Source: Macrostomum lignano (lineage: Eukaryota). From it: a stretch of 64,000 nucleotides of DNA. Below the pieces are notes generated by a model. That model was not told the origin of the DNA. It saw only the letters and a list, made by a program, of their open reading frames with translations, and did not search any database. The stretch spans positions 1 through 64,000 of the forward strand of contig NIVC01000224.1 in the NCBI GenBank assembly GCA_002269645.1, read 5' to 3'. Each line of letters opens with the position of its first letter. Positions within the stretch are counted from its first letter, which is position 1. Positions 6,176 to 57,959 of this stretch are shown here, one piece after another. The position numbers and the translations under genes are program-made.

Positions 6176-8439
6176 TTTCTTTAAACTAGTGTTAAATGCA
6201 CACTATGTTTAGAATACTATCATTCTTCATGCACTATTTTTATTGATTCAGGGGCAGTCAAGTCCAAGCATGACTGTTTCGATAGCTTCATTATATAGTT
6301 CCTTCATGCCTACATATACAGATAAATGTTTTTTAATCTACCCATTTCATATTTTCATCAAATTGTTTTCAGTTGTTTTTGTCCTGCAGTAACGTTTGTA
6401 AATCCTTTTGGATTGTAATACTTTAGCATAAACCAGTCAGTATACATGTACTTTTTAAATTTCTTCTAGTTTAATAATATTGTATCCATTCATAGCAGAC
6501 TAGAGTATATAGCTGTTTGCAAGACTACATTTCTTGCAAGAATAAAAAATATAAGACAAGAAAATGTCTTATTTATAATAAATAATCACATTTAGAGTCA
6601 AACAGATAATTCTACAGAATATCAGGCTGCATTCATATGTACCATATATTAAGATGTTCAAACTCCAATATTCCATGCATATTTACAATGCAACAAAGCT
6701 TTTTGCAATCATATTTCATTTCTGTGCTTGATTTGTTTTGTCTCTTCTTTCCAGTTTTTGCATCTTCTTGCACTTTTTGAGACTATACACAATGCACACG
6801 AATTTTCTCAGCTCTTTATATGTCATGTGTGCTATATTTAAACTGCCTTTGTAATTTCGTAACTATACTTACTATAAAGCTTCTCTATTATACACTACAC
6901 TCATGCTTTAATTTTTGCTGTAGATGTGTAAATATATTCTTTTTCCGTCTGAAGCAGACTTCTGAGTTAAAATATGAGTACATATAGATCGTCCTATAGA
7001 TTTTTGAATCATCCAAAAGGATAATGTGATACATAAACTTTGCAATCATTCTTGAAACCACAGATATGAATTAGCGCCTAGCGGGATACTAAATTTCGCG
7101 CATAAATGCACATATCAGTCGTTCACGCTAAGAAATGTAGCTAACAATTTTCAGATAATGTTTTGAATTACTATATTTGCGTTTTCCAACGCAATGCGCG
7201 TTGTAATTAATTTGTAATACAATGTAAAGCAATGTAATACTTGAGTTAGTACCAGGCTGTTGCGCGACGCACAAATTGTTCAAAGTTAAACGAATGCGTA
7301 TCATAGGTATACAGTCATATTATAACAAAATATGTTGATTTAAGGGTTCGGCGCTGCTTAAACAGAAAATTAATTAAATGAAATGATCTATTTTAAAAAA
7401 ATAAATTACTCTATAGACTTTGACGATGATATGCTGGTGTATTTCTAGTTTTCGTGCAATAAAATAATTCCGATAATAATATTTAAACAAAGCGGCATTT
7501 CATGCTGTCCTGACATTTTGTTGTGGTTTACGACACAAAATACGTTTGTTGCATCTATATTGCGTTCTTAGGTAAAGATTGCGTCACGAATTTTTAAAGA
7601 AAAAAACGGAAGCATAAGCAGTGCCTGATTTTGAGAACGACCCAACAGATTAAAACGATACGTGAGCTAATAAATATAGCTCGTATTTACGTGTACGTAA
7701 AGTAGGGGAGGCATCATTGTCTCAAACATGCTAAAAGTTCAGTCTGCTCGATCAGACACACACTTGTTGGGGGTGATGTTGAAGTTACAGTTTTCGAAAT
7801 TGCAGTTACCAAACGAATTGGGTGCTTCGCCAACTGGATTGCTAATAGCTATCATGCAGTTCGAAACAGAATTTGAACCAGCATCGTATGCTCTTAATGT
7901 CGGTTGGCATTCTCTCCTCTATCAGAAACTTTTTGCAACCTTTGAATATGTTGTTCCGTCTGCTTGTCGGTAGACTTTCCCTTGCTGTCCTCCCCTACCT
8001 GTCGCAGAAGATCTTGTTCTTCAGAGGTCAACTCACGCAACAGAGAAATGTCGTCAACGTTGGTTGGATCACGGAGTTTCTCGTCGATGAGGCGTTCCTG
8101 GTTCTCAGTAAGGACTGTCCATTGGCCGATTGGAACGGTCCTCGCGGTTTGCGAGACAAATGACAAAATCCAACTCATCGCCAATCACACCGCCTATTTC
8201 GTTTTCGCGTATTCTGTGGTAGCGCAACATGATGCAAAACCGAAAAATACTGTAGAGAAAGTGGAGAAGTAATAGAGGAATGCAAAATACTACATTGAAT
8301 TAGTAGGGGTCCTTTGTAGACAGTGACAGCGGGCGCGAAATAAAGTCTATGTATAGAAGTAAAGGCGTTTTTGTCATAGACAGTTGCAGCGGGCGCAACA
8401 TGTTCTTGAAACGTATTCAAGAATACAAAATTATTCTTG

Positions 8440-8853
8440 ATGAGAATTTGTCTATGGTTAGAATGACTCCGTCCCCGCACCCCCGCTTGGTGAGAATTTG
8501 TCTATGGTTAGAATGACTCCGTCCCCGCACCCCGCTTGGTGAGAATTTGTCTATGGTTAGAATGACTCCGTCCCCGCACCCCCGCTTGGTGAGAATTTGT
8601 CTATGGTTAGAATGACTCCGTCCCCGCACCCCCGCTTGGTGAGAATTTGTCTATGGTTAGAATGACTCCGTCCCCGCACCCCCGCTAGGTGAGAATTTGT
8701 CTATGGTTAGAATGACTCCGTCCCCGCACCCCCGCTAGGTGAGAATTTGTCTATGGTTAGAATGACTCCGTCCCCGCACCCCCGCTAGGTGAGAATTTGT
8801 CTATGGTTAGAATGACTCCGTCCCCGCACCCCCGCTTGGTGAGAATTTGTCTC
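8440..8853. repeat. 50-bp minisatellite (~8 copies)
   Basis: Unit GTGAGAATTTGTCTATGGTTAGAATGACTCCGTCCCCGCACCCCCGCTTG, directly adjacent copies, no spacers. Confidence 0.95.
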
Positions 8854-8997: not shown

Positions 8998-9698
8998 TTA
9001 TACAATGTTACTAATTTTGTCACTGAACAACTACTATGCGCACTGAATTAAATTGCGTTACAAGCGTAATAACAGTTAAGTAACGAAAGTAATTAATTCT
9101 CTACAAATAACTCCGCAAGCTCCGTACCGACGCGACTGGAACCGTCAGCCAACTGCTTGGACCTGTCGACCAGAAACGCTGAGAAATCGCATCCCCGTCC
9201 CTACCTCATTAGGCTGCGCTGCTGTCTCACAATCCAGAATTTTATTGGCAAATGCGCCCAAAAGAGCAAATTATATCTCATATCTTGTCTCTAATCTGCT
9301 CCGACTATCTAGTGCCGCATCGGCCCACCAGCGAGTGCCAAAGCTGTGAAATATTGCCATCAATTAAACAGATCCGCTGCAAACGGTGACAGGCATCGCA
9401 GCAGCGCTGAATTATGGGTGCATTAGGGCATAAGCGCTTAGAGAGGCTATGCGGCCTGTGGGCAGTGGCATCCCAACGACCGTGACATTCTATTCAAAGT
9501 TGTGAAGGATTAATTAATTAAAGCAAAAACTTGGAGCCTCCAATCGACTAAATACACTCGTATAGGCAGCAGAGCTAAATTCTTCATTGGTTTTTTATGA
9601 GCTAATTTTATCCAAAAGTGTAGACATAATATTAAACAGAGCTTTAAAAAGCTATTCGATTTTGGTACAGCCCTACACTAAAGAGTTCGCTGAGAAGA

Positions 9699-12600
9699 AT
9701 GAAATCAGCCGCGAGCAGCAGCTCCGGGGCATCAGAGAGGCCCCGCTCAGCCGTGCGCCAGTTCTGTGGCTACACGACCGCCCACGGCCTGGGCCGCTTC
9801 TCCGAGCAGTCTACCTTTTTCGGCAGGCTCATCTGGGTCTCTTTTCTGCTGGGCACCTACGGCGGCTTTGTCTATCACCTGTACACCCTGTTCGACAGGT
9901 TTGCCCAGGCTCCTGTGCTCACCACAATGACCGTGTCCTCGCTGCCGTTCCAGTTCCCGGATGTGTACATCTGCCCGACGCAGGCGAACACCATGAGCAA
10001 GGCCATTAAGTCTCTGACCGAATTTGGAGTTACCGATACGGAGTTCCTTACCAAGAGGACCATCGACGAGAAGATTGGATTTTACGCTTTTGACATTAAA
10101 AACAGTGACTTCAACCAGATGACGATGGCACTGCTGAGCGTCCTGGAAAGCACAGAAGAGTCACTGATGGCGAAGTTTCAGTTTCCAGCACGTGGTGAGC
10201 ACTCTGCTATTTGAAAACTCTTTGCCAGAGCAGCATTCCATATATCTGAGCTCTTATCTGACAAAATCCCTATTCAAAATTTGAGCCATGAGAAACTTGC
10301 TTTAGGCTTTGAGGATATCGGGCTGCATAAGTTTTCCTCAAAAACATGTTAGAGAACCGAGCCGAGTGTCGGACAACGCTCTCAGGCGAGGAATACTCTG
10401 GCGACGTGAGTTCAGCAGTTGTCTACGGATTTGCCACCATGACAGTCACGTCTGTGAACACCTCGGCATTCGAGCCCAGTCCGTACAGAGCGCTTAGATC
10501 GTGCATACCATGGAATGATGCAGCTCGGATGCTGCATAGTACAAGCGCCAGCCTAGCCAACAGGCTGCTGTCACTCAAATTTTCCGACGACGAGTCCCGC
10601 TGTCGCTCGCCGCCCGGACTGCCGCTGTCTAAGCTTCTGCCGTTTGCATCTCGTGAGTCAAGAAAATTCAGAGATGAGAAAGTTCTAACAAAAAATAAAG
10701 CATCGCACGTTGCTGATTTTCCAGGACCAACGTTACAGCTTATCGACTGCTTCCCAAAAAAGACTGTGGATGCATTATTTCTTGTCTGCTCGGAGCTCCA
10801 AATCATCACTTATGAATCCTGCGCCGAATGCTGCGCCAGACTCCATTTCCCGTACGTGGCCCTCCAGCCCCTGTCGTGCCGATGCGGCTTCAGCATCAGC
10901 GGCATCAAGAATACGTCCGACACGTGCAACAGTTATTGCAAGAACGACAGCACAAGAGTTTGCGGCTCGGCTACTAGCGCTACGGTTCTGCAGATTCGGC
11001 ACAATGGTGAGTGAATCATTCAACCATGTAGGCCCGAGTTCGGAGAGCATCAGGAGGCATTTTAACCGACAGCTCAGATCCTATAAATCGTCTGTATTCG
11101 TCTAATTTCCTATTTCCTGTTTTTAGCATCAAAGGCGCTGCACATAGGAAACTTCAGCCAGTTGACGCCGCAGGCGCACGGGCCCTACTGCTTCTTTAGA
11201 GATGAGATTGGCAAGCTGAATGCCGGCTTCTGTGAAATCCCCTTTTGCCGAATTTGTAAGTCCAATCCGCCGCAGTGATGAACTTCATCGCCAAAGTCTC
11301 GAGAAAATTAGCTTCTAGGCTCAAACTGCTCACTTTTCAGCCAAATCTAAGACCTACGACTGTGCTGTGAGCTCATCAGACAAGCACGTAGAGCAGCTGA
11401 AGCTCTCTCGGTATACGGGATGGACGAATGTCACCGCCTCCGGCAGACGATGCATGCCTTGGAGTAAATTGCTGAGAATCGAGGAGCTGGTTAAAACGCG
11501 CAGTCAGTACCGCCTGATTTACTTGAAGCTCTCACAATCTAGCAAAAATGCATTCTCAGCTTGAATTCCTACCTTCATGCAGTATTCGCCCTGGCTGAGG
11601 CTTTGAAAAATATCTACATCCGAGTTCCCGACGAAATCGAGAACAGCGAGGACAACTTCTGCCGCTCAGCGAGCATTGTGGTCGACTCCGTCCCAAGTTG
11701 GGATGAAACTATGATAATGTGAGTTCAAAACTGAGTTCGTGACAAATCTTTGCACGAGTATGAGTTCCAAGCTTTAAATAAACAGACCAATAAAGCTTTT
11801 CTTCCATCTCAGGCGGCACAGCGTCTTTAGCTCAAGCGTGCCAATTTGCATCCCGGAAGACTTTCTCGTCGGACTGGCGACACCGCAGATTATGGGTTTC
11901 GTCTCATTTTTCGAATTGTCGGTAGAGACCTGCGATATACCGAAGTGCTGTGAGTTTTGAGCCTTTTAGAGAAAAAACTGTAAGACAGCTAATGACTGTT
12001 TGAATTTAATCGGCATTTTTAGACACCACTGCCCCCAGCGTGACTAGCGCTATCAGCGATTCGGTTGGCAGACACCTGCTGGCTCGCCAGTTCGGCAGCG
12101 ACCTCGGTGTCAGCCTCGTTGAGTGCAGCTTTGCTGGCCAGAAGTGCACCAAGGAAGACTTTGTGAACTTCGCCCACCCGCAGCTGGGCATGTGTCACCA
12201 GTTTCTCAAGCAGCGCTTCACCGCCAACATGAGCAGCACGCAGTTGGCAGAGAGCCAGCTGTCAGTCAAGTACTTCACGGACTCGACAGACGCAAAGGGA
12301 CAGACGTTGTCAAATATTGACAAGCTGACGCGGGTGGTGCGAGGAGGCCGCAGTGCTGATGCCAGACAGACAGCATTCAAGGTGAGTCTTTGACGGCTGC
12401 TTACGCTTACTTTCACACTGAACAATGCTCACTCTCACACTGAACAATGCTCACACTCACACTGAACAATGTTCACACTCACACTGAACAATGCACACAC
12501 TCACACTGAACAATGCTCACTCTCACACTGAACTATTCTCACACTCACACTGAGCAATATTCGCTCTCACACTGAGCAATATTCGCTCTCACACTGAGCA

Positions 12601-14484
12601 ATATTCGCTCTCACACTGAGCAATATTCGCTCTCACACTGAGCAATATTCGCTCTCACACTGAGCAATATTCGCTCTCACACTGAGCAATATTCGCTCTC
12701 ACACTGAGCAATATTCGCTCTCACACTGAGCAATATTCGCTCTCACACTGAGCAATATTCGCTCTCACACTGAGCAATATTCGCTCTCACACTGAGCAAT
12801 ATTCGCTCTCACACTGAGCAATACTCGCTCTCACACTGAGCAATATTCGCTCTCACACTGAGCAATATTCGCTCTCACACTGAGCAATATTCGCTCTCAC
12901 ACTGAGCAATATTCGCTCTCACACTGAGCAATATTCGCTCTCACACTGAGCAATATTCGCTCTCACACTGAGCAATATTCGCTCTCACACTGAGCAATAT
13001 TCGCTCTCACACTGAGCAATATTCGCTCTCACACTGAGCAATATTCGCTCTCACACTGAGCAATCATCCGAGCCTCCATTGCGAACTTGAAGGCCGTCAT
13101 CGTACCGGAGGGATCCTTCCCATGGGCTTCAAAGAGCATTGACGTGGCCACGGCTCAGCGCATGGACGTGCAGCTTAGCTTGAACAAGTACTCGAAACTG
13201 TCCAGCGCATCCAGGCCCTGCATGGAGACCACAGAACCTGTCACATATCGACTGCCGTCCTGGAACATGCCACCATCGAATGAAAATTTCAAGTACTAAT
13301 CTGTATCCTGCTTTTGGGAATTAACCTGTGCTAATCTGTGCTAATATCGTTATTACGCTATGAATTCATTTACTAATACTATAACCTTGGCTCCAGAATC
13401 GATTGGGCCGCAAATAGGATTATTTCAACCAGCGGCTGGACACGGAAACTGTCGATGCTGCGCGAGACGCTGCTCAACAACAGCGGCCCAAGGTTAGTAG
13501 TGCCAGCAGGTGAAGTGCTCCTGAAGTTATTCTTAACTGCGGAAATTGTCACAACAAACGAAAAGTACTTCGCGATTTCAGCATCCTGACCGATGCGGGC
13601 CGCCTGTTTGACGTCCCCGATCGAGGCGATTGCGTCAACACCTACGTCGTGCGGGCCTTTCTCAACAACTGCAGATGCCTGCCGTCGATTCTGCCCATCA
13701 AAGCCGAGCTGCTCGCCAATTTCAGTTACTGCTTCAACATCAAGGATGCTGATAACATTTCTGACGACACCGAGAGGTGCTACATTGATCAAATGTCCCG
13801 GATTACTCAATATCAATATGAGGCTACAAAACTCTGCAAGCCCCTGTGCAGCACCTTCGAATACACCAGCCGCTTCATCCCCTACACCTGGCCTAACCTG
13901 CATTTCATGCAGTCGCTCGAGTTCCTGCGGCAGCTGGCTTCCGACTTGGGCTACCGGCACAACATCAGCCGGCTGAAGGGTGTCTCCAGCCTGTACTATG
14001 CATATCTGAGGGCTCAGAGACTCGCAGACACGCCAGTTAGCAAAATCAGCAGCGTCGAGTCTCAGAGATTTGATGTGGAGCTGACGGCGCTGGAAAACCG
14101 GCTGGCTCAGCTGACCGTCCAGGCTGAGCGGCCCTTCGGCCAGGAGGTCTCGGAGGAGCCGGCCTACCCCGCCAAGAACCTCCTGGCCGACATTGGAGGT
14201 GAGAAATCATTTTGAGTGGTTTTGGTATCGGCAGCGCGAATTCAGTCAGTTTTCAATCGGATTGCCTTTCAGGCGCCCTGGGTCTCTGGTCCGGCATCTC
14301 CATTCTCACTGTCTGCGAGTTGCTGGAGCTCTTCATCTACCTGGGGCAGGAGCTGGTCCTGAGGATGCGGCGACAGCCCTCCAAGGGGCAGCCAGGAGAC
14401 AACAACGAGCCTGACTTACCATCTAAGGTAGAGATGGAGTCGGAGATGAACGCGGTTGAGAATGAAAAAGTCACTCATTTTTGA
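9699..14484 (+). CDS. DEG/ENaC (amiloride-sensitive) channel subunit with kringle-WSC-kringle insertion; 12 exons, 1041 aa
   Basis: Exons 9699-10194, 10353-10652, 10725-11006, 11127-11255, 11341-11502, 11583-11718, 11813-11949, 12023-12381, 13093-13292, 13397-13492, 13582-14198, 14273-14484 (3126 nt; all GT-AG and phase-consistent). Motifs: TTAHG gating motif, TM1, FPDVYIC, ECSFAGQKC..DF..LGMCHQF, thumb cysteines (NNCRC, LCKPLC), LLADIGGALGLWSGISILTVCELLE (TM2 with GxS filter). Confidence 0.93.
12415..13065. repeat. 22-bp minisatellite filling ENaC intron 8
   Basis: Unit TCACACTGAGCAATATTCGCTC, ~28 near-identical copies, degenerate at the 5' end. Confidence 0.95.
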
Positions 14485-15593
14485 TTGAAGAGAAATCCTT
14501 GCTGAAATTCTGCTTGAGATTCCGAGAAGGCTGCAGTGTTGGGGGCAGTCCATGCACGGACAAATGAAGTAGAAGAACGCTGCACTTCTCCACCGTAGCG
14601 TAGCCACAAACACTTTGATGCTTGCTTTATTCACTATCCAAAATTCCACAAGCCGATAAAATGTCTTAGCGCTTAGTGCTGAAAATCTGGTGTTTTTTAC
14701 CTCACTGAATGCGTTTTTGTGCCTGCAGCCTGCAGTGACAGTTGCTTTATTTTGCAGCGCCCTTCCACTTAGGAACAGACCGTGAACGAATGTTAAACTG
14801 GATCGCAGATTGCTTATTTAATCGGTGAAAGGCAAAATGGACTGCAGTTTAGCTGATTGGCTTGCAGGCCCTTCGCTTCAGTGATTTTTGCTAATTCGCG
14901 TGCGGGAATCGCTGATATTACACAATTATATTATAACCTTATCACATTATGATACTATACATTAATCCTTTATGATATTCTCCGCTCACTACATTATATC
15001 ATTATTGCATTAATCAAATTATTAAATGATGATATTATCACATAACAAGATCATCATATAATACCTTACCTTTTTGCTTAAACGCTACCCTACCTAACAC
15101 TGACCTTGCAATTTTCACATAATTTAATACGAGTTTCATTAAAAGTGCCGAAATCCGCGTGCTTTGTCAACACTAATATTTTTCTTCAGCAGTCCGTAGA
15201 ATGAATGAAACACGAATAAAAAACTGCTTTGCCTCCATTTCACAGATTATTTTGTTATTGCATTGCAAGTATATAATCCTAGTCATTCGAAAAAATCTTT
15301 TTAAGCTGACATTAAAAAAGTTTTTTAAAAATTGATGCAGCGACAAAGCTGAGCTGCTGAGCAAATTTTTTCGAATTAAAAATTGTTCAAAAATTTTGCT
15401 TCCATTTGTTTTCGTCTTCAACAGCAACCAGAAAAGTTGCTGTGATGGTCAAAATAGGCAGCTGTGAAGCATTCTGGAACCCCGGATCCTGGAAACAACA
15501 ACAAGAAACTGCAAATTACGAAGCCCCGCATGCAAGGTCACAGTTAGAGCAGGAGGCGTCAGATGGCGCGCCACAGAGCCTTAATTAGAGCTG

Positions 15594-18520
15594 ACGAAGT
15601 CCGCCCCGTTGGCAGTGTCGGGCGCCCCGGCGTCGCGTAGGAGGCAGTTCCCGTATCGACGGGTTCGGGCCTGACCCCGCCTGAGCGGGCCCTGCAGGCT
15701 GAGCAGCAGGACGTCCTGAACAGGTTGGGGGCAGCATCCCTCGGCCCGGATCACGTGGCCCGCCAGTTGAAGTCGCCGCCGGCACAGGATGATGGACGGG
15801 CGCTGCAGCTTGGCCCGATCATACAGGGCCTCGTCAGCTCGAAAGGCCGCAGAGAGCAGCTCTGAGTGCGCCGAGTCCAGCTGCCGCTCCAGTGCAGCAG
15901 TCAGCGTCCACGTCTCGGCGTTGTAGAGCAGGACGGTTTCGACCACCGCCTGCCACAGCCGAGCCCTCTGGCGGTGGGGCAGCGCTTCGGACTGGACGAC
16001 GGCCCGGATCGAACGGAAGGCCGCCCAGGCAACTCCTCTGCGCCGCCGGAGGTCTTCGTCCACGTGGGGCACCAGACCGCCGAGGTAGGTGAACCGCTGG
16101 CAGCGTGCGAGCCTGGTCGTCTGCCGTCTGCGCCGCGGTATGTCAGGTCCGCTGGGATGTCGGCCGGCACAGTCAGCACCTCGGTCTTCAGCGTGTTGAC
16201 AACCAGTCCGACGCTCGATGCCATCTCGACGAACCTATCGATCTGGCGCTGGGCACCTTCAATAGACGAGGACAGGAGGGCGAGGTCGTCGGCGTAGCCA
16301 AGCACGCTCAGGCGCTTTTCGCCGTGGCGACGACCGATGCGTTTGCGCAGCAGGAAGCCGTCGTCAGCCGAGGGGAGTGCGGTCCGAAGCACCCAGTCCA
16401 GCAGCAGCACGAAGAGGAACGGCGCCAAGGTGTCTCCCCGCAGAACTCCTGATGAAGTGTCGAACAGGTCAGACAGGCCGTCCGCCGTCACCACAGCAGC
16501 TCGAGTATCGCAATACAGCTCCATGACAGCGTCGATTAGCTGCTGTGGGACCCGGTAGGCTTGAAGGACAAAGGGAGGCGCGGCTCTCAACACTGAGTCA
16601 AACGCCTTTCGAAAGTCAACGAAGACAATGATCAGCGTAGACTGGCGGATGCGCGCCTCCTCGATGACACGGAAGAGTGCGAGGATCTGTGTCACTGTAC
16701 CGGGTTGCGGCCGGAATCCGTTCTGCTCGTACCGCCAGCACCGACTGCAAACGATCGAGCAGCAGCCGGTTGAATAGCTTCGCGGTGCAGGGCATCAGCG
16801 AGATCTCGCGGTGGTCTTCTTTCCGCGTTGTCCCTACCTTCTTCGGGATCGGCACGATGTGGGCGACGGTCCACTCGGTGGGCGCGGGGGCGCCGGCGAG
16901 CACGCGGTTTATGACGCCTGTGACCTGGGAGGCCACACAGCGGAGCCGCAGCGCTTCGACCGGGACTTCGTCGGGGGCGAGCGCCTTGGCGCCTAATGTT
17001 TTCCGAGAGAACAGCACAACGTCCTCCGTGGTGGCTGGGCTGGTGCAGAAGTCCTCCTCAGCTGGGAGCGGCGTGTCCAGTGGGAGCGCAAAACTGGCAG
17101 GCAGCGGCGACGCGACGCGTTCACGTCGGGGCCGGCTGCAGTGATGGACCGGATGGCGTCGTCGACAGCGGCTTGCTGCCGCTCATTTAGAAGGCTTTCA
17201 AATGCGTCTTAAGCGTCCCCCGTGGGCCGCCGGATTCTGCGGAGTCGCTCGATGTTGAGCCGCGCCTGCCTGATGGTCGGGTCGCTCTGCCAGACAGGTA
17301 GCGATTTCTGCGCTGGCCGCATCAGCGGGACCGTCTGCTGATGTCGGAAAACTCCGCCTCGCGCTGATCTCCAAGCGCGCCGATGAAGGCGGCTGCGAAT
17401 TGACGCTTCACGCGGGTGTCCAACAGTGCGCGATAGTAGCGCCGTGACCGTGCTTTGGCGGTCGGTAGAGCTGGTCGTGAAGCTGCAAGTCGCAGAGCAG
17501 GAGTCGCTGGTCTGACCGGAGAGCCAGCGGAGCCATGGTGTCGCAGTTGGTGACGCGGCGGCGCATGGTCGAGTTGCGCCTTTCTTCTCGTGGCGTTTTG
17601 CCCGCGTGCGTTCCGTCGCCTTCTTTTGCAGCCCACAAAGGTGATCAGGCGGGCAGGGGGCTTGCAGAACTGGGTGTTTGCGGACACCAGGTCCAGCCGG
17701 TCAAGCAGGTCCTCCAGCGCATCGGTGTTGGCGTTCTCGCCTCCCGCGACAAAGGGCGAGCGCTCGGACCTCCGCGGAACTGAGTTCACGTCTCCGATCA
17801 CTGCCAGCATGTCGCGGTTAGGCACCTCTTCCAGCTGCAAAGTCGAAGTCGTGAAGTCGAAGAAGGCACGAGCCTCCTCGGGGTGAGCAGCGGTGGATGC
17901 ATACGCGTAAAACAGCCGGATGCAGCGGGCGCGCAGTCGCGGGGACAGCGAGATGCAGTGCACGCTCTGCCGAAGGCGCGGTCCGATCAGCACGCCGACA
18001 CCGCCCCGACCGCGGTCGTCTGCCGACGTGTACAGGTGGCTCCAGCCGGCTTCGAGGTCCTCAGAGTGGAGCCCCGGCTCAGCCACGATAGAAACCTCCT
18101 GCAGCATGATGAGGTCCGGCTGTGGGTCGTGGGCCAGCTGGACAAGAATGATGCGACGCCAGGAGGCCTTCAGAGTTCGGCAGTTCATCGTGCCGAGCCT
18201 GAGGCGGCCACCTGGTACAGCTGGGGCCAGATGGAGGTTGGCCTCATGGTCCCCGGCGCCACCCGGCGAATCCATAGTTGAGGTAGCAGGGACTGGGGAC
18301 AACAGGCGCCTGGCCGCGCCACGGAGTCGCCCTCGCCGGTTGCGCTCGCGCCGCCGCTCAGTGTGACGTTGCGCGCTGCGCTGACCTCTGCGAGTCCCTG
18401 CTGTGCTGAGCTTTGCTGCCGCAGCCGAAGCGCGGCCGTCCGAGCCAACCGAGGTCATCCGCGGCCTGATGATCTGGCCGCAATACCAGGAGGTGTCAGC
18501 ACTATTTGCACGGGTGTGCA
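15594..18520 (-). mobile_element. RTE-clade non-LTR retrotransposon (APE endonuclease + RT), frameshifted
   Basis: Endonuclease: RLGTMNCRTL, IMLQEV, GRGGVGVLI, VIGDVNS. RT: WTVAHIVPIPKK, HREISL, VDFRKAFDSV, GVLRGDTLAPFLF, GYADDLALL. RTE-type C-terminus: WAAFRSI, YNAETWTLT. Split over several frames; GC-rich relative to flanks; no 3' tail or TSD found. Confidence 0.9.
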
Positions 18521-18825
18521 AATAAAATAACTCTGCAAATAAAATGGCTCTGCAAATAAAATGGCTGGAAACAATATTTTTGATTTTTTGTCACTAACTC
18601 AAATTAGCCCTTCTTACACCTTGCTCGTGGAAAATCACTATTAGCCCTACTTTGAGTGGCTTGCATGGTCATCTTGCAGTGTTTAGTTTCAGATCGGAGA
18701 TTGTAGTTTTGGCCGATATCCGGGAATCACTGGTCTATTCGGAATCACAGAGTTCTGAAACAATTCAGACCACCGATGCTACCGTCCAACATGAAAGGAT
18801 CGAGTCAATTCTGAGTCAAGTAAGG

Positions 18826-21605: not shown

Positions 21606-23299
21606 CATTTTTTACCTTGGCTCGGCGGCGTCTGGGCCCCTCACTAGCCAGCTAGATTGGCCATGCCGGCTGGGTATTGTACATGTAGGGACTATAATTT
21701 TGTATATTAAATCGTATTAAGTTTAGATTTTGTGCTAGAAAGGTTATTTTTTTAACAATTTTCAACATTCTTCAAACTAAGTAGCTATCTTTAAATAGCT
21801 CAATAAATAAATAAATATAGGCCTAATTAACATCGGCTTTTGCCTTTTGCTCCATGTCTAATAGAGTATAAATCTATAATATATTAAAGTATATCTAAAA
21901 ACCCAATCTAACTGTATAGTAGATGACTTAATCTTACAAGTTACAATTTTTTCACAATTTTTTTCTATATCTTTGGACAAATATAAAAAACCTAACTTTA
22001 TAGCCTATTTGTATTTTTATAACTATTTGGCTAAAAAACTACTATTGTAAACAATATTTAAATAAATCATTCTTTAGCAATTTACTGTTTAGTCATTTGT
22101 GTCAAGGTAGGCCTAGCCTATACCATACCATACTTACTTAGGAAGGTGTCATGTGTGCCTAAGAATATATTTCAGTGTATTTTTGGAGTGTGCACTGTGC
22201 ACAAAGCTAAAATATGAATTTGTGCACTGAGGTCTACATTTGTTTATTGACAAATACATAGCTAGAGTATTAATGTGCCATAGCAAATAAAACTCAGTAA
22301 AAGTCCAATTAAAACAAAACTAAAAAATGGATAAATTTTGGTACTTTTTATAGGCTTTTTTTTCAACTCAAATCTTTTGCTTTATTTTAGCTCACATAGA
22401 AAATTGTCAAAAGATATAGCTTTAACTTTATGCGCAGTAAAATCCCATTTTGAATTTTATTATTTGTTTCACTTACCAAGAAACAATTTTTTATTGATAT
22501 GCTTGGAAAAAACATAATCTTAAAGCATATTTTACGCACTGCATATGCAGATTATACATTTGGGTGATTCATTATAAGCTAAATTTTTCTGATCAGCTTT
22601 TGCTAAGCGCCATTGTGCGCTAAAAACTTCTACAAAGCCTTTGTTGTGTGCCATGTTCGCCACTTTGCAAGTTCGCGCACATTTTTTGTTGATGTACACT
22701 GGAATTTTCTGCCATAATGTACACCTTCCTGAGTGTAGAGCCTATATAATTTTGTTATTTCAATTTTAAATATCTTCATAGAATAATATTATTTCCAATG
22801 TATTAAGTCTAATATTAATTATACCAAAGTAATATTTGATTTTTTGTTTTAAAGTTAAAAACTAATCAAAGAACCATTTTTATGCTTTGCATGTTTCCAA
22901 GCAAAACAAAATCATGTGTTACATTTGTAAAAATGTGACTTCACTTTTGGTTAAAAATAATTATAGACTATTATATCTGGTAAGTGACAATGTTTTGACC
23001 TAAATTGATTAAGTTTGTTTTTAATTTCTGTTTAAAGTTTCATAAATTTATATAATTTATTATGGTAAATAAAACATTTAAAATTTAAAATTTTCTTGCC
23101 AACTAAGCTTCAACAAACTAAGACTGTCAACTAAGAGGGTATATATGCACTACCTAAGGATGAGTAATTAAACATTAGCTAACACCATACATGCACAACC
23201 TCCCCTAATTTACATTAGCCCTGTGACATACATTTTTAACCAAAAAGATGACTTACCTAATACCTAATATGTATAAAGAACCTAAGCAAAACTTGCAAA

Positions 23300-23745
23300 T
23301 TACCTTGGCTGGGCCCCTCACCAGTTGGCCAGATTGGCCGGGTGTGTGCATGTATGCAGATGCAGATGCTGGGACAAATAAAGTTTTATTTTTATTAGAG
23401 GCAGGGGGGTTGTGTGCACCCTGGCACAAATTAAGCGTCATTGGCACACAACCGGCAAGAGGCATTACTGCCCATTCCGCCGACTCCCCTGAGCAGGCAT
23501 ACAAGCGCGCAGATACGTTACGCAGGCACACACTCACACAGGAGTGTACAGCGGCCCTAACTTTATCAATTGTTAGGCATGTACACTTCACTGCGCCTTG
23601 GGAGGTTGGCTTTCAAGGCCGTTAATTGCACAAGCGAGCCAAGCCAAGATTCCAATCCAGCCCCAAATTAATGTGGCTGCACTTGGAATCGAGCCTGAGT
23701 CGTGGCACACCAGAGCAGCTGCGCTACCGCTGGGCTACGGCCCCC
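23300..23745 (-). mobile_element. tRNA-derived SINE
   Basis: Minus strand starts GGGGGCCGTAGCCCAGCGGTAG (A box) with B box GGCTCGATTCC (23695-23685). The cloverleaf does not pair. The 3' boundary is approximate. Confidence 0.6.
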
Positions 23746-23783: not shown

Positions 23784-33280
<9,497 letters not shown>

Positions 33281-55009: not shown

Positions 55010-57510
55010 AGAGATGAACACAGGGTCTCCCTTCTATCCCAGATGAACACAGGTCTCCCTTCTATCCCAGATGTACACAGGTCTCCCTTCTATCCCAGAT
55101 GTACACAGGTCTCCCTTCTATCCCAGATGAACACAGGTCTCCCTTCTATCCCAGATGTACACAGGTCTCCCTTCTATCCCAGATGTACACAGGTCTCCCT
55201 TCTATCCCAGATGAACACAGGTCTCCCTTCTATCCCAGATGTACACAGGTCTCCCTTCTATCCCAGATGAACACAGGTCTCCCTTCTATCCCAGATGAAC
55301 ACAGGGTCTCCCTTATATCCCAGATGAACACAGGTCTCCCTTATATCCCAGATGAACACAGGGTCTCCCTTATATCCCAGATGAACACAGGGTCTCCCTT
55401 ATATCCCAGATGAACACAGGGTCTCCCTTCTATCCCAGATGAACACAGGTCTCCCTTATATCCCAGATGAACACAGGTCTCCCTTCTATCCCAGATGTAC
55501 ACAGGTCTCCCTTCTATCCCAGATGAACACAGGTCTCCCTTCTATCCCAGATGAACACAGGGTCTCCCTTATATCCCAGATGAACACAGGTCTCCCTTAT
55601 ATCCCAGATGAACACAGGGTCTCCCTTATATCCCAGATGAACACAGGGTCTCCCTTATATCCCAGATGAACACAGGTCTCCCTTCTATCCCAGATGAACA
55701 CAGGGTCTCCCTTATATCCCAGATGAACACAGGGTCTCCCTTATATCCCAGATGAACACAGGGTCTCCCTTATATCCCAGATGAACACAGGTCTCCCTTC
55801 TATCCCAGATGTACACAGGTCTCCCTTCTATCCCAGATGAACACAGGGTCTCCCTTATATCCCAGATGAACACAGGTCTCCCTTCTATCCCAGATGAACA
55901 CAGGTCTCCCTTCTATCCCAGATGAACACAGGTCTCCCTTCTATCCCAGATGAACACAGGTCTCCCTTCTATCCCAGATGTACACAGGTCTCCCTTCTAT
56001 CCCAGATGTACACAGGTCTCCCTTCTATCCCAGATGAACACAGGTCTCCCTTCTATCCCATATGTACACAGGTCTCCCTTCTATCCCAGATGTACACAGG
56101 TCTCCCTTCTATCCCATATGTACACAGGTCTACCTTCTATCCCAGATGTACACAGGTCTCCCTTCTATCCCATATGTACACAGGTCTCTCCCTTCTATTC
56201 CAGATGTACACAGGTCTCCCTTCTATCCCATATGTACACAGGTCTCCCTTCTATTCCAGATGTACACAGGTCTCCCTTCTATCCCATATGTACACAGGTC
56301 TCCCTTCTATCCCAGATGTACACAGGTCTCCCTTCTATTCCAGATGTACACAGGTCTCCCTTCTATCCCAGATGTACACAGGTCTCCCTTCTATCCCATA
56401 TGTACACAGGTCTCCCTTCTATCCCAGATGTACACAGGTCTCCCTTCTATCCCAGATGAACACAGGGTCTCCCTTCTATCCCAGATGTACACAGGGTCTC
56501 CCTTCTATCCCAGATGTACACAGGTCTCCCTTCTATCCCATATGTACACAGGTCTCCCTTCTATCCCAGATGTACACAGGTCTCCCTTCTATCCCAGATG
56601 AACACAGGGTCTCCCTTCTATCCCATATGTACACAGGTCTCCCTTCTATCCCAGATGTACACAGGTCTCCCTTCTATCCCAGATGTACACAGGTCTCCCT
56701 TCTATCCCAGATGTACACAGGTCTCCCTTCTATCCCAGATGAACACAGGTCTCCCTTCTATCCCAGATGAACACAGGTCTCCCTTCTATCCCAGATGTAC
56801 ACAGGTCTCCCTTCTATCCCAGATGAACACAGGGTCTCCCTTATATCCCAGATGAACACAGGGTCTCCCTTCTATCCCAGATGAACACAGGTCTCCCTTC
56901 TATCCCAGATGTACACAGGTCTCCCTTCTATCCCAGATGAACACAGGTCTCCCTTCTATCCCAGATAAACACAGGGTCTCCCTTATATCCCAGATGAACA
57001 CAGGTCTCCCTTATATCCCAGATGAACACAGGGTCTCCCTTATATCCCAGATGAACACAGGGTCTCCCTTATATCCCAGATGAACACAGGTCTCCCTTCT
57101 ATCCCAGATGAACACAGGTCTCCCTTATATCCCAGATGAACACAGGGTCTCCCTTCTATCCCAGATGAACACAGGGTCTCCCTTATATCCCAGATGAACA
57201 CAGGTCTCCCTTCTATCCCAGATGAACACAGGTCTCCCTTCTATCCCAGATGAACACAGGTCTCCCTTCTATCCCAGATGAACACAGGTCTCCCTTCTAT
57301 CCCAGATGAACACAGGGTCTCCCTTCTATCCCAGATGAACACAGGTCTCCCTTCTATCCCAGATGAACACAGGTCTCCCTTCTATCCCAGATGAACACAG
57401 GTCTCCCTTCTATCCCAGATGAACACAGGTCTCCCTTCTATCCCAGATGAACACAGGTCTCCCTTCCATCCCAGATGTACACAGGTCTCCCTTCTATCCC
57501 AGATGTACAC
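55010..57510. repeat. 28/29-bp minisatellite, ~2.5 kb
   Basis: Unit GATGAACACAGGTCTCCCTTCTATCCCA. Confidence 0.97.
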
Positions 57511-57959
57511 AGCTACTTTAAGGAGTATCACACAGTCTCGCTACAGGCATTTGCAACTTCATGACTGGCTATACCTAACAGTTTTCCACTTCTGTCACCG
57601 AAAAATAAAGTTGCTTTCTTAGTTCATCATTGAGTGCTATAGGTAATTAACCTGTCAGAGTTTAGTACAGTGATCAGGTTTAGAAGATAAAAGAATGTCA
57701 AAACAAATACTTGAAGTAATAAGCATGGATAGAACCTGCACGATAGGGTCAAGAAAAGTTACGGCTGTTAAAAAAATTTAAATTTTAAATGAAAACGGCC
57801 TCTTCATGCTGGCATGCTGCGCCACAATAATTATAATTAGTCTGCAGTAAAAAAATTGTTCGCTGGACAATATTGGGCTTGAAAATTATTATGGTCGTGA
57901 CGCAGATAAATGGATGCATGCAGCAGCAGACCAGCTGCCTGCAGGGAATGTGGAAGGAC

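What the first reader, a model, noticed from the sequence alone, without database searches (positions are those of the whole stretch)
10353..11255. WSC domain inserted inside a kringle by a symmetric phase-1 exon
Kringle 1 Cys1-3 are on exon 2 and Cys4-6 on exon 4. The 282-nt WSC exon (10725-11006) between them has phase-1 introns on both sides. Because kringle disulfides pair 1-6, 2-4 and 3-5, the WSC domain would be stapled into a kringle loop, unlike the tandem order in Kremen. Skipping exon 3 restores an uninterrupted kringle in frame, giving a possible on/off splice switch. The whole six-exon cassette is also bounded by phase-1 introns, a signature of exon shuffling.
Basis: partly seen in the sequence, partly recalled or inferred. 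Interest (0 to 1): 0.8.

Follow-up and report, generated by a model that had tools for sequence, protein, structure and literature searches.

The report
WSC domain nested in channel kringle
A flatworm (Macrostomum) sodium-channel gene of the DEG/ENaC family carries an extra six-exon block in its outer loop, in which a sugar-binding WSC domain, encoded by one exon, sits between the two halves of a very divergent kringle-like module; the layout is real and conserved, but there is no sign that it works as a splicing switch.

Summary
The sequence observation holds. Exons 10353-10652, 10725-11006 and 11127-11255 have good GT-AG sites, and all their flanking introns are phase 1. Exon 2 has 3 cysteines, exon 3 is a Pfam-significant WSC domain with 10, and exon 4 has 3.

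The six-exon cassette sits in its extracellular finger region.

The same exon plan occurs in four Macrostomum lignano paralog loci. A search of 1.84 billion proteins found the full cassette only in M. lignano.

The kringle identity of exon 2 + exon 4 is supported but not proven:
- Profile-profile alignment to canonical kringles spans the exon 2/exon 4 junction (probability 57-93%, far above shuffled controls).
- Pfam scores are below threshold.
- An AlphaFold model confirmed the WSC fold but did not recover a kringle.

The splice-switch idea has no support. No database model lacks the WSC exon; exon 4 is the one missing from some models. Skipping exon 3 would still leave a 37-residue loop where kringles have 11.

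The nested domain plan on an ion channel is undescribed. It is best filed as a new variant of known kinds. Its function, probably an extracellular binding or tether module, is inferred.

The parts
9699..10194 (+). Exon 1 of a DEG/ENaC channel gene: N-terminus with the 'TAHGLGRF' HG motif, TM1 and the post-TM1 'FPDVYICP' motif. Ends in a phase-1 donor.
   Evidence: Pfam ASC PF00858, E 3.6e-17, residues 22-142; splice sites; 63% identical to P0002.
10353..10652 (+). Exon 2 (300 nt, phase 1-1): kringle-like N-half 'K1-N' with Cys1 C171, Cys2 C216 and Cys3 C249. Motifs are C-x5-G-x2-Y-x-G, C-x2-W and C-R-x-P. Compared with a canonical kringle it has a 23-24-residue insertion between Cys1 and Cys2.
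   Evidence: hhalign of E2 alone against kringles covers kringle positions 5-55, score 19.6, z 5.0. It is the most conserved cassette exon (72% identity, dN/dS 0.17). Not detected by Pfam or HMMER.
10653..10724 (+). Intron 2: 72 nt, phase 1, in frame and without a stop codon. If retained it would add 24 residues to the linker.
   Evidence: ORF 10346-11014 runs through it. M. lignano model P0010 carries about 21 extra residues at this position.
10725..11006 (+). Exon 3 (282 nt, phase 1-1): a complete WSC domain with ten cysteines.
   Evidence: Pfam WSC 36.1 bits against cut-off 27.8. The AlphaFold model of the P0002 equivalent matches yeast Wsc1 7pz2 (TM 0.71-0.72) and Kremen1 (E 1.5e-5). The homologous exon is phase 1-1 in L002, L003 and L004, and a phase 1-1 junction is equally compatible in L001.
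11127..11255 (+). Exon 4 (129 nt, phase 1-1): kringle C-half 'K1-C', GPYCFF...FCEIPFC, with Cys4 C381, Cys5 C395 and Cys6 C400. Spacings of 13 and 4 are near canonical.
   Evidence: Pfam Kringle profile positions 49-79, 14.1 bits. hhalign covers kringle positions 57-78, score 27.5, z 9.9. Its only PDB sequence hits are kringles.
11341..11502 (+). Exon 5 (162 nt, phase 1-1): start of kringle 2, with Cys1 C410 and Cys2 C440. An alternative phase-1 donor exists at 11463; the long form matches the paralogs.
11583..11718 (+). Exon 6 (136 nt, phase 1 to 2): middle of kringle 2 with the 'DNFCRS' motif (Cys3 C483).
   Evidence: Pfam Kringle profile positions 8-53, 25.6 bits. A PDB profile search gave 57 hits, nearly all kringles, best E 9e-5.
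11813..11949 (+). Exon 7 (137 nt, phase 2 to 1): divergent C-half of kringle 2 (C514, C542, C547; 'CDIPKC').
   Evidence: hhalign covers kringle positions 51-78, score 22.0, z 7.6.
12023..12381 (+). Exon 8: the DEG/ENaC extracellular domain resumes ('ECSFAGQKCTKEDF...GMCHQF').
   Evidence: Aligns to FaNaC 7yvb/8on7 at the CxFxxxxC motif; 84% nucleotide identity to L001.
13093..14484 (+). Exons 9-12 (13093-13292, 13397-13492, 13582-14198, 14273-14484): the rest of the ectodomain, TM2 with 'GLWSGIS', and the C-terminus. The complete protein is 1041 aa.

Best explanation
The region is part of an intact 12-exon DEG/ENaC channel gene of a Macrostomum flatworm. A six-exon cassette bounded by phase-1 introns encodes about 380 extra extracellular residues. 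It is inserted in the variable finger region, between the post-TM1 segment and the conserved CxFxGxxC motif.

The cassette reads: kringle-like N-half (E2), WSC (E3), kringle C-half (E4), then a second divergent kringle (E5-E7).

The most likely architecture is two tandem kringles, with a WSC module in the already enlarged Cys3-Cys4 surface loop of the first. The WSC is carried by one symmetric 1-1 exon and flanked by linkers of about 20 residues. With the canonical 1-6, 2-4 and 3-5 pairing, all three kringle disulfides would bridge E2 and E4, and the WSC would be a stapled excursion.

The WSC exon appears constitutive, not a switch. The whole block most plausibly serves as a glycan- or protein-binding or tethering module on the channel's gating-relevant finger.

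Shown: exon plan, phases, WSC identity, host gene, conservation, and restriction to Macrostomum in the databases searched. Inferred: the kringle fold of E2 + E4, the disulfide pairing, an origin by exon insertion, and the function.
For: - Gene model and phases.
- WSC: Pfam above threshold; fold match to Wsc1 and Kremen1.
- E2 + E4 against verified canonical kringles (verified): 92.6% probability, 74 columns covering kringle positions 5-78, score 41.7 against shuffled 11.1 +/- 2.1, maximum 19.4. An independent 7-sequence alignment gives score 29.5 against 11.3 +/- 2.5, and the alignment still spans the E2/E4 junction.
- Each of the four halves aligns to the correct half of the kringle profile.
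- Multi-kringle proteins align through E4 into E5 as an ordinary inter-kringle junction.
- Cysteine parity is 3 + 10 + 3. E2 and E4 must each pair outside themselves, and all these Cys are invariant in 7 paralogs.
- Four M. lignano loci fit the same exon plan: phase 1-1 WSC exon in L002-L004, and an equally compatible phase 1-1 junction in L001.
- Purifying selection on E2 and E4.
- Channel core: Pfam ASC, plus PDB hits to FaNaC, ENaC and ASIC, which place the insertion before the CxFxxxxC motif.
Against: - Neither kringle reaches Pfam's gathering score (14 and 25.6 bits against 34.3).
- HMMER never aligns a kringle to E2, and E2 alone is only marginal in hhalign.
- The AlphaFold model (10-row alignment, pLDDT 70.6) is unconfident around Cys1 and Cys6. 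It predicts two confident helices between Cys2 and Cys3, unlike what I recall of canonical kringles, which are mostly strands and turns there (not checked here). It gave no kringle-only Foldseek hit.
- Some database models (P0001, P0008, P0013) lack E4 altogether.
- No RNA data for the window were available.
- The proposed function has no direct evidence.
Confidence: 0.55

Rival explanations
1. E2 is not a kringle half. It is a separate, partly helical cysteine-containing module next to the WSC (a Kremen-like KR/WSC-packed unit). E4 is then an orphan or degenerate half-kringle that packs elsewhere. The kringle-like motifs in E2 would be remnants or convergence.
For: - Pfam and HMMER do not detect E2.
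- hhalign on E2 alone gives 6.8% probability.
- AlphaFold gives pLDDT 85-93 to two helices between Cys2 and Cys3.
- Models without E4 exist.
Against: - The E2 score is still 5 sd above shuffles, and it aligns to kringle positions 5-55 in the correct order.
- The joint E2 + E4 alignment is collinear across the junction in two independent alignments.
- Three invariant Cys in E2 and three in E4 need partners.
- The long Foldseek alignments to Kremen1 (164-173 columns) are most simply read as KR + WSC against E2 + WSC. This is an inference, because the output gives no ranges.
Confidence: 0.2
2. Swapped pairing: E4 and E5/E6 form one circularly permuted kringle, joined through the short C6-to-C1 linker. 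The divergent E2 and E7 halves pair with each other around it, so WSC plus a whole kringle are nested inside an outer kringle.
For: - E4 and E5/E6 are the two most canonical halves.
- The chimera E5/6 + E4 gives the best kringle score of all combinations (95.7%, score 50.2).
- Cys1 and Cys6 are disulfide-bonded neighbours in kringles (established knowledge), so a C6-to-C1 join is sterically easy.
Against: - The order C-half, linker, N-half is exactly what every tandem-kringle protein shows, and such proteins align straight through E4-E5.
- E2 + E7 scores poorly (11.9%).
- K1 and K2 align to each other half for half, including their enlarged Cys3-Cys4 loops.
- It requires a less parsimonious history.
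Confidence: 0.1
3. One reading: exon 3 is a regulated cassette exon, and its skipping toggles between a WSC-bearing and a plain kringle.
For: Only that the exon is symmetric (282 nt, phase 1-1), so skipping keeps the frame.
Against: - Every M. lignano model that covers the region contains the WSC, including the five NCBI models.
- The variably present exon in database models is E4.
- Skipping E3 leaves a 37-residue loop, not a canonical kringle.
- All cassette exons except E6 and E7 are symmetric, so symmetry is not specific to E3.
Confidence: 0.08
4. Artefact: the exons are chance ORFs, or a chimeric reading of unrelated genes or pseudogene debris.
For: No transcript evidence is available for the window itself. 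The surrounding window is extremely repeat-rich.
Against: - Twelve collinear exons with consensus splice sites give an uninterrupted 1041-aa protein with all DEG/ENaC landmarks.
- There are 59-60% identical full-length annotated homologues with matching exon boundaries.
- dN/dS is well below 1 in E2, E4 and the channel core.
Confidence: 0.02

Closest known systems
Kremen1/2 ectodomain (Kringle-WSC-CUB; PDB 5FWS)
   Same: It is the only well-described protein family that combines a kringle and a WSC domain in one rigid extracellular unit. It is the best structural match of the modelled E2-WSC-E4 segment (Foldseek E 1.5e-5, 164-173 aligned columns).
   Different: In Kremen the kringle is complete and precedes the WSC in tandem, followed by a CUB domain and one TM helix. 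Here the WSC lies between Cys3 and Cys4 of the kringle-like module. A second kringle follows, there is no CUB, and the host is an ion channel. It is not a Kremen.
Canonical kringles of plasminogen, tPA, HGF, prothrombin and ROR
   Same: Six cysteines in the same order. Shared motifs are G-x2-Y-x-G, C-x2-W, C-R-x-P, GP(W/Y)CF and C-x-(I/V)-P-x-C. Profile-level similarity over the whole domain.
   Different: Both copies fall below Pfam's threshold. There are large insertions in K1 (24 extra residues between Cys1 and Cys2, and 26 plus the 94-residue WSC exon between Cys3 and Cys4). K2 has three of its loops enlarged. The insertion replaces the loop that, from my knowledge of plasminogen kringles, carries the Asp55/Asp57 anionic centre of the lysine-binding site, so classical lysine binding is unlikely.
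DEG/ENaC channels (closest solved: FMRFamide-gated FaNaC 7yvb/8on7; also ENaC, ASIC, pickpocket)
   Same: HG motif, TM1, post-TM1 motif, cysteine-rich ectodomain and TM2 with G-x-S; Pfam ASC. Family-specific insertions in the finger region are typical of the superfamily (my knowledge: ENaC GRIP domain, nematode MEC-4 extra domains).
   Different: No described DEG/ENaC carries kringle or WSC modules; literature searches found none. Three M. lignano DEG/ENaCs near the FaNaC branch tested in oocytes gave no peptide response (PMC9234716). Whether those carry the cassette is not stated.
Nested extracellular domains (from my knowledge, not tested here: integrin beta PSI/hybrid/beta-I; laminin L4 inside an LE repeat)
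   Same: One disulfide-rich module is interrupted by another complete module and closed by long-range disulfides.
   Different: Different folds. No kringle host or WSC guest has been described, and here the guest is a single 1-1 exon.
Yeast Wsc1 cell-wall stress sensor (PDB 7PZ2)
   Same: Best single-domain structural match of the WSC exon product (TM 0.71-0.72, rmsd 2.5-3.6 A). It is a WSC domain used as an extracellular anchor of a mechanosensor (PMC9024836, abstract seen).
   Different: A fungal single-pass sensor, not a channel. The functional analogy is only a lead.

Membership tests
WSC domain (PF01822) | Score above Pfam's gathering threshold | tested here: met
   36.1 bits for exon 3 alone and 32.1 in the whole protein, against a cut-off of 27.8. 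Most of the eight M. lignano homologues carry precomputed PF01822.
WSC domain (PF01822) | WSC/PAN-like fold | tested here: met
   The AlphaFold model of the P0002 equivalent (60% identical protein, not the window protein itself) matches Wsc1 7pz2 with TM 0.71-0.72 and Kremen1 with E 1.5e-5.
Kringle (PF00051), module K1 = exon 2 + exon 4 | Score above Pfam's gathering threshold (34.3 bits) | tested here: not met
   14.1 bits, C-half only, with the WSC removed. Paralogues score 14.7 bits or show no hit.
Kringle (PF00051), module K1 = exon 2 + exon 4 | Six conserved cysteines and signature motifs in kringle order over the whole domain | tested here: met
   Cys171/216/249 and Cys381/395/400 are invariant in 7 sequences. 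hhalign gives 92.6% over kringle positions 5-78, z about 14.6, and 56.9% over positions 18-78, z about 7.
Kringle (PF00051), module K1 = exon 2 + exon 4 | Kringle three-dimensional fold | tested here: inconclusive
   The model has pLDDT below 50 at the Cys1 and Cys6 regions and helices between Cys2 and Cys3. There is no kringle-only chain among 41 Foldseek hits.
Kringle (PF00051), module K1 = exon 2 + exon 4 | Disulfides 1-6, 2-4, 3-5 | not testable with these tools
   Only a parity argument is available: 3 Cys in E2, 10 in the WSC and 3 in E4.
Kringle (PF00051), module K2 = exons 5-7 | Pfam threshold / recognisable kringle | tested here: inconclusive
   25.6 bits, below 34.3. However, the PDB profile search returns 57 hits, nearly all kringles, best E 9e-5. 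UniProt also names the K2 fragment of one paralogue 'Kringle domain-containing protein' (P0156).
DEG/ENaC (PF00858, ASC) | Pfam match; two TM helices; HG motif; G-x-S in TM2; cysteine-rich ectodomain | tested here: met
   Pfam E 3.6e-17. The full 1041-aa model shows TAHG, FPDVYICP and GLWSGIS. PDB hits are to FaNaC, ENaC, ASIC and PPK. Channel activity was not tested.
Kremen | Tandem order Kringle-WSC-CUB followed by a single TM helix | tested here: not met
   No CUB domain, a different domain order, and an ion-channel host.
Exon-shuffled class 1-1 module | The module coincides with one exon flanked by phase-1 introns, and the position is conserved | tested here: met
   282 nt, phase 1-1 in the window. 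300, 276 and 312 nt, phase 1-1, in L002, L003 and L004. In L001 my mapping gave 292 nt, phase 1 to 2, but an alternative phase-1 junction encodes the same protein. The shuffling event itself is inferred.

The most novel reading that the evidence does not exclude
Macrostomum has evolved a lineage-specific subfamily of DEG/ENaC channels. Their finger domain carries a disulfide-stapled kringle scaffold presenting a WSC glycan-binding domain. This would be the first case of a whole domain nested inside a kringle. The module would act as an extracellular tether or ligand sensor that gates the channel, for example by anchoring to matrix or glycocalyx for mechanotransduction, echoing the role of WSC in fungal wall-stress sensors.
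Probability: 0.2. Interest if true: 0.75.

Novelty: new variant of a known kind. Interest (0 to 1): 0.5.

Why it matters
If the nested reading is right, it is a clean, intron-phase-documented example of a complete module inserted into a loop of another disulfide-locked module. Tandem exon shuffling rarely produces that outcome, and I know of no kringle example.

It also adds a new kind of extracellular appendage to the DEG/ENaC superfamily, at the finger. In relatives this region binds peptides, or is cleaved or tethered to control gating.

Macrostomum lignano is, to my knowledge, amenable to RNAi and transgenesis. The family (at least about seven paralogue groups) is therefore experimentally accessible for asking how added binding modules couple to channel gating.

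If E2 turns out not to be a kringle half, the finding reduces to a lineage-specific mosaic insertion, which is still undescribed but less remarkable.

Tried and rejected
I used substrings of the M. lignano homologue P0002 instead.
- Single-sequence AlphaFold of the P0002 cassette failed (pLDDT 35.7). Its Foldseek run served only to learn the output format.
- The third homologue search, with a 7-sequence cassette profile, returned a single hit because of candidate capping and added nothing.
- A look-up of the P0001 locus, to see whether an E4 exon was missed there, found no record. Whether the E4-less models are splice forms, gene losses or prediction errors stays open.
- The window holds no paralogue of the cassette (tblastn).
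- Literature searches for DEG/ENaC with kringle or WSC, for Macrostomum ENaC, and for the M. lignano gene identifiers found no description of this architecture.
- I rejected a Kremen-family assignment (no CUB, different order) and a chance or artefact reading.
- I considered dating the WSC insertion by comparing intron positions in K1 and K2. Both have an intron in the Cys3-Cys4 loop, but the phases differ (1 against 2) and the loop alignment is unreliable, so no conclusion was drawn.
Full report
**1. What is at the coordinates**

Reading 9000-13500 and translating the three forward frames shows a eukaryotic split gene.

Exon positions and phases:

| Exon | Coordinates | Length | Phase in/out |
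|---|---|---|---|
| E2 | 10353-10652 | 300 nt | 1-1 |
| E3 | 10725-11006 | 282 nt | 1-1 |
| E4 | 11127-11255 | 129 nt | 1-1 |
| E5 | 11341-11502 | 162 nt | 1-1 |
| E6 | 11583-11718 | 136 nt | 1-2 |
| E7 | 11813-11949 | 137 nt | 2-1 |

Each has a pyrimidine-rich acceptor and a GTGAGT or GTAAGT donor, and each is flanked by phase-1 introns.
- E5 has an alternative phase-1 donor at 11463. The long form matches the homologues.
- The introns before E2 and after E7 are both phase 1, so the six-exon block is a symmetric unit.
- Intron 2 is 72 nt, in frame and free of stops.

**2.

- Exon 1 (9699-10194) encodes the N-terminus, TM1 and post-TM1 motif of a DEG/ENaC channel (Pfam ASC, E 3.6e-17).
- Exon 8 (12023-12381) resumes the channel ectodomain at the conserved CxFxGxxC motif.
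- Guided by homologues, I completed the model to 12 exons and 1041 residues, ending at 14484. TM2 carries GLWSGIS.
- With the cassette removed, the protein matches solved FaNaC, ENaC, pickpocket and ASIC chains.
- In those alignments the cassette lies between the post-TM1 segment and the CxFxxxxC motif. This is the variable finger region.

**3. Domain content of the cassette**

- *WSC.* Exon 3 alone is a WSC domain above Pfam's threshold (36.1 against 27.8 bits).
- *Cysteines.* Exon 2 has three (C171, C216, C249), exon 3 has ten, exon 4 has three (C381, C395, C400), and E5-E7 have six.
- *Kringle by Pfam.* Only fragments are seen: profile positions 49-79 on exon 4 (14 bits) and 8-53 on E5/E6 (25.6 bits). 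Both are below the 34.3-bit cut-off.

I therefore used profiles.

- With the WSC excised, a 5-sequence alignment of E2 + E4 was compared with seven canonical kringles.
- That comparison gave 92.6% hhalign probability and 74 aligned columns covering kringle positions 5-78, with two insertions.
- The score of 41.7 compares with 11.1 +/- 2.1 (maximum 19.4) for 200 column shuffles.
- A second, 7-sequence alignment gave 56.9% and score 29.5 against 11.3 +/- 2.5, over kringle positions 18-78. It again crosses the E2/E4 junction.

Taken separately, each piece aligns to the correct half of the kringle:

| Piece | Kringle positions | Score | z |
|---|---|---|---|
| E2 | 5-55 | 19.6 | 5.0 |
| E4 | 57-78 | 27.5 | 9.9 |
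| E5/6 | 6-56 | 36.5 | not computed |
| E7 | 51-78 | 22.0 | 7.6 |

- A PDB profile search with K2 returns 57 hits, nearly all kringles (best E 9e-5).
- With K1, the only two hits at E up to 10 are kringles, but they are not significant.
- K1 and K2 align to each other from Cys2 to Cys6, including their enlarged Cys3-Cys4 loops.

Cysteine spacings, taking plasminogen K1 as the canonical reference:

| Interval | K1 | K2 | Canonical |
|---|---|---|---|
| Cys1-Cys2 | 44 | 29 | 20 |
| Cys2-Cys3 | 32 | 42 | 27 |
| Cys3-Cys4 | 131 (94 from the WSC exon) | 30 | 11 |
| Cys4-Cys5 | 13 | 27 | 11 |
| Cys5-Cys6 | 4 | 4 | 4 |

**4. Relatives**

- Protein searches found only Macrostomum lignano proteins. The best is P0002 (BOX15_Mlig006056g1, 1049 aa), at 59-60% identity.
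- An exhaustive HMMER search of 1.84 billion representatives with a cassette profile gave 1325 hits at E up to 0.001.
- Every hit covering the whole cassette, or collinear parts of it, is from M. lignano.
- The other hits I examined are of two kinds. One is WSC-repeat proteins from Diplonema, an oyster and fungi. The other is multi-kringle proteins, for example from Darwinula.
- The multi-kringle proteins align to profile positions 214-297. That is E4 followed by the N-half of K2, exactly like the junction between two tandem kringles.
- Window fragments at 22167-22738, 23386-23745 and 28307-28458 are 75-93% identical in DNA to unrelated parts of M. lignano loci. This points to shared mobile elements. 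The window therefore comes from M. lignano or a close congener, and its gene is a paralogue or orthologue absent from the protein databases.

**5. Conservation of the exon plan**

I mapped four annotated M. lignano proteins onto their loci.

| Locus (protein) | E2 | WSC exon | E4 | E5 |
|---|---|---|---|---|
| L003 (P0005) | 297 | 276 | 123 | 174 |
| L002 (P0007) | 303 | 300 | 123 | 195 |
| L004 (P0155, the most divergent) | 297 | 312 | 123 | 201 |

- All exons in the table are phase 1-1.
- In L003 and L004, E6 runs from phase 1 to 2 and E7 from phase 2 to 1. The L002 mapping stalled inside E6, so its later exons were not mapped.
- In L001 (P0002), a GTAG repeat makes the E3/E4 junction ambiguous. 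The phase-1 alternative encodes the same protein.
- Against P0002, E2 is the best-conserved part of the whole protein (72% identity, dN/dS 0.17). E4 is 62% (0.25), the channel core 64% (0.33), and the WSC 39% (0.60), with its cysteines kept.

**6. Structure prediction**

- A single-sequence model of the cassette failed (pLDDT 35.7).
- A model of P0002 E2-E4 with a 10-row paralogue alignment reached pLDDT 70.6 and pTM 0.63.
- Its WSC part matches yeast Wsc1 (TM 0.71-0.72). The whole model matches Kremen1 (E 1.5e-5, 164-173 columns).
- Those alignments are long enough that the Kremen kringle probably aligns with E2. The tool gives no ranges, so this is an inference.
- The Cys1 and Cys6 regions are below pLDDT 50.
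- The segment between Cys2 and Cys3 is predicted, with pLDDT above 90, as two helices.
- No kringle-only chain appears among the 41 hits.
- The model therefore neither assembles nor excludes a kringle from E2 and E4.

**7. Interpretation**

The best reading is two tandem, strongly diverged kringles, with a one-exon WSC module in the enlarged Cys3-Cys4 loop of the first. The whole six-exon unit is inserted in the finger of a DEG/ENaC channel.

- The cysteine parity (3 + 10 + 3) means E2 and E4 each need outside partners.
- The canonical 1-6, 2-4, 3-5 pattern (established for kringles) would make all three bonds cross the insertion.
- The linkers of about 20 residues on each side remove any steric objection.

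Two structural rivals remain.

- E2 may be a distinct module, with E4 an orphan half-kringle.
- Alternatively the pairing may be swapped, with E4 + E5/6 forming a permuted kringle. This is suggested by the fact that these are the most canonical halves.
- Neither can be excluded without coordinates or disulfide mapping.

**8. The splice-switch idea**

- Skipping E3 is in frame, but so would be skipping E2, E4 or E5.
- No homologous model that covers this region lacks the WSC.
- The exon absent from some UniProt models is E4: P0001, P0008 and P0013. P0004 has a shortened E4.
- I could not retrieve those loci, so this may be prediction error.
- P0010 carries about 21 extra residues where intron 2 lies, compatible with read-through of an in-frame intron.
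- Removing E3 would leave a 37-residue Cys3-Cys4 loop.
- The switch is therefore an untested speculation with no supporting observation.

**9. Function**

- Nothing here tests function.
- In other family members the finger is where ligands or proteases act. This is my knowledge for ENaC and FaNaC.
- WSC domains bind glycans and anchor a fungal mechanosensor (PMC9024836, abstract seen).
- The insertion removes the loop that carries the acidic residues of the lysine-binding site in plasminogen kringles (my knowledge), so classical lysine binding is unlikely.
- I therefore propose an extracellular binding or tether module that couples to gating, with low confidence.
- Dandamudi et al. (PMC9234716) tested three M. 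lignano DEG/ENaCs near the FaNaC branch. They saw no peptide-gated current and did not mention such domains.

**10. Novelty and verdict**

- The proteins exist in public databases, labelled only 'WSC domain-containing protein' or 'hypothetical protein'.
- I found no description of kringle or WSC modules on a DEG/ENaC channel, or of a domain nested in a kringle.
- Nested extracellular domains and 1-1 exon shuffling are known principles, so this is a new variant of known kinds.

Noticed in passing
window 12413-13064 (inside intron 8, 12382-13092): Almost the whole intron is a 22-nt minisatellite (TCACACTGAGCAATATTCGCTC), 29.6 copies at 97% match, preceded by a related degenerate repeat.
   Followed up: partly
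window 24364-58629: About 34 kb is a patchwork of more than 20 different minisatellite arrays with periods of 4-51 nt. The largest is about 2.5 kb (28-mer x 88 at 55012-57512). One is a 1.7-kb CTGT array (30509-32204). These arrays explain the extreme GC and AT skews in the composition profile.
   Followed up: partly
window 15581-18521, minus strand: A GC-rich (64%) non-LTR retrotransposon remnant lies downstream of the channel gene. ORF 17322-18521 has an endonuclease/exonuclease/phosphatase domain and ORF 15901-16695 a reverse transcriptase. The chimeric M. lignano model P0013 has a similar-looking antisense translation after its channel part.
   Followed up: partly
window 22167-22738, 23386-23745, 28307-28458: These segments are 75-93% identical in DNA to non-genic parts of M. 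lignano loci L001 and L002 (one 62-nt sub-stretch reaches 95%). They are presumably shared mobile elements. They are the best clue that the window is from M. lignano or a very close relative.
   Followed up: partly
window 8436-8852: A 50-nt unit repeated 8.4 times at 98% identity lies about 850 nt upstream of the channel gene's start codon. Its relation to the promoter is unknown.
   Followed up: no
M. lignano proteins P0001, P0008, P0013 (no E4), P0004 (short E4), P0003 (no E7), P0006 (no E6-E7), P0010 (extra ~21 aa at intron 2): Database models of the paralogues differ by whole cassette exons. This could reflect alternative splicing of symmetric exons, assembly gaps or prediction errors. The WSC exon is never the one missing.
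   Followed up: partly
P0002 residues about 219-240 (equivalent to window E2, about 10511-10585): AlphaFold predicts two alpha-helices with pLDDT above 90 in the segment WNDAAQKLL...LANRLLALNF between Cys2 and Cys3. This is the most conserved stretch of the cassette. As far as I recall, it is unlike canonical kringles.
   Followed up: no
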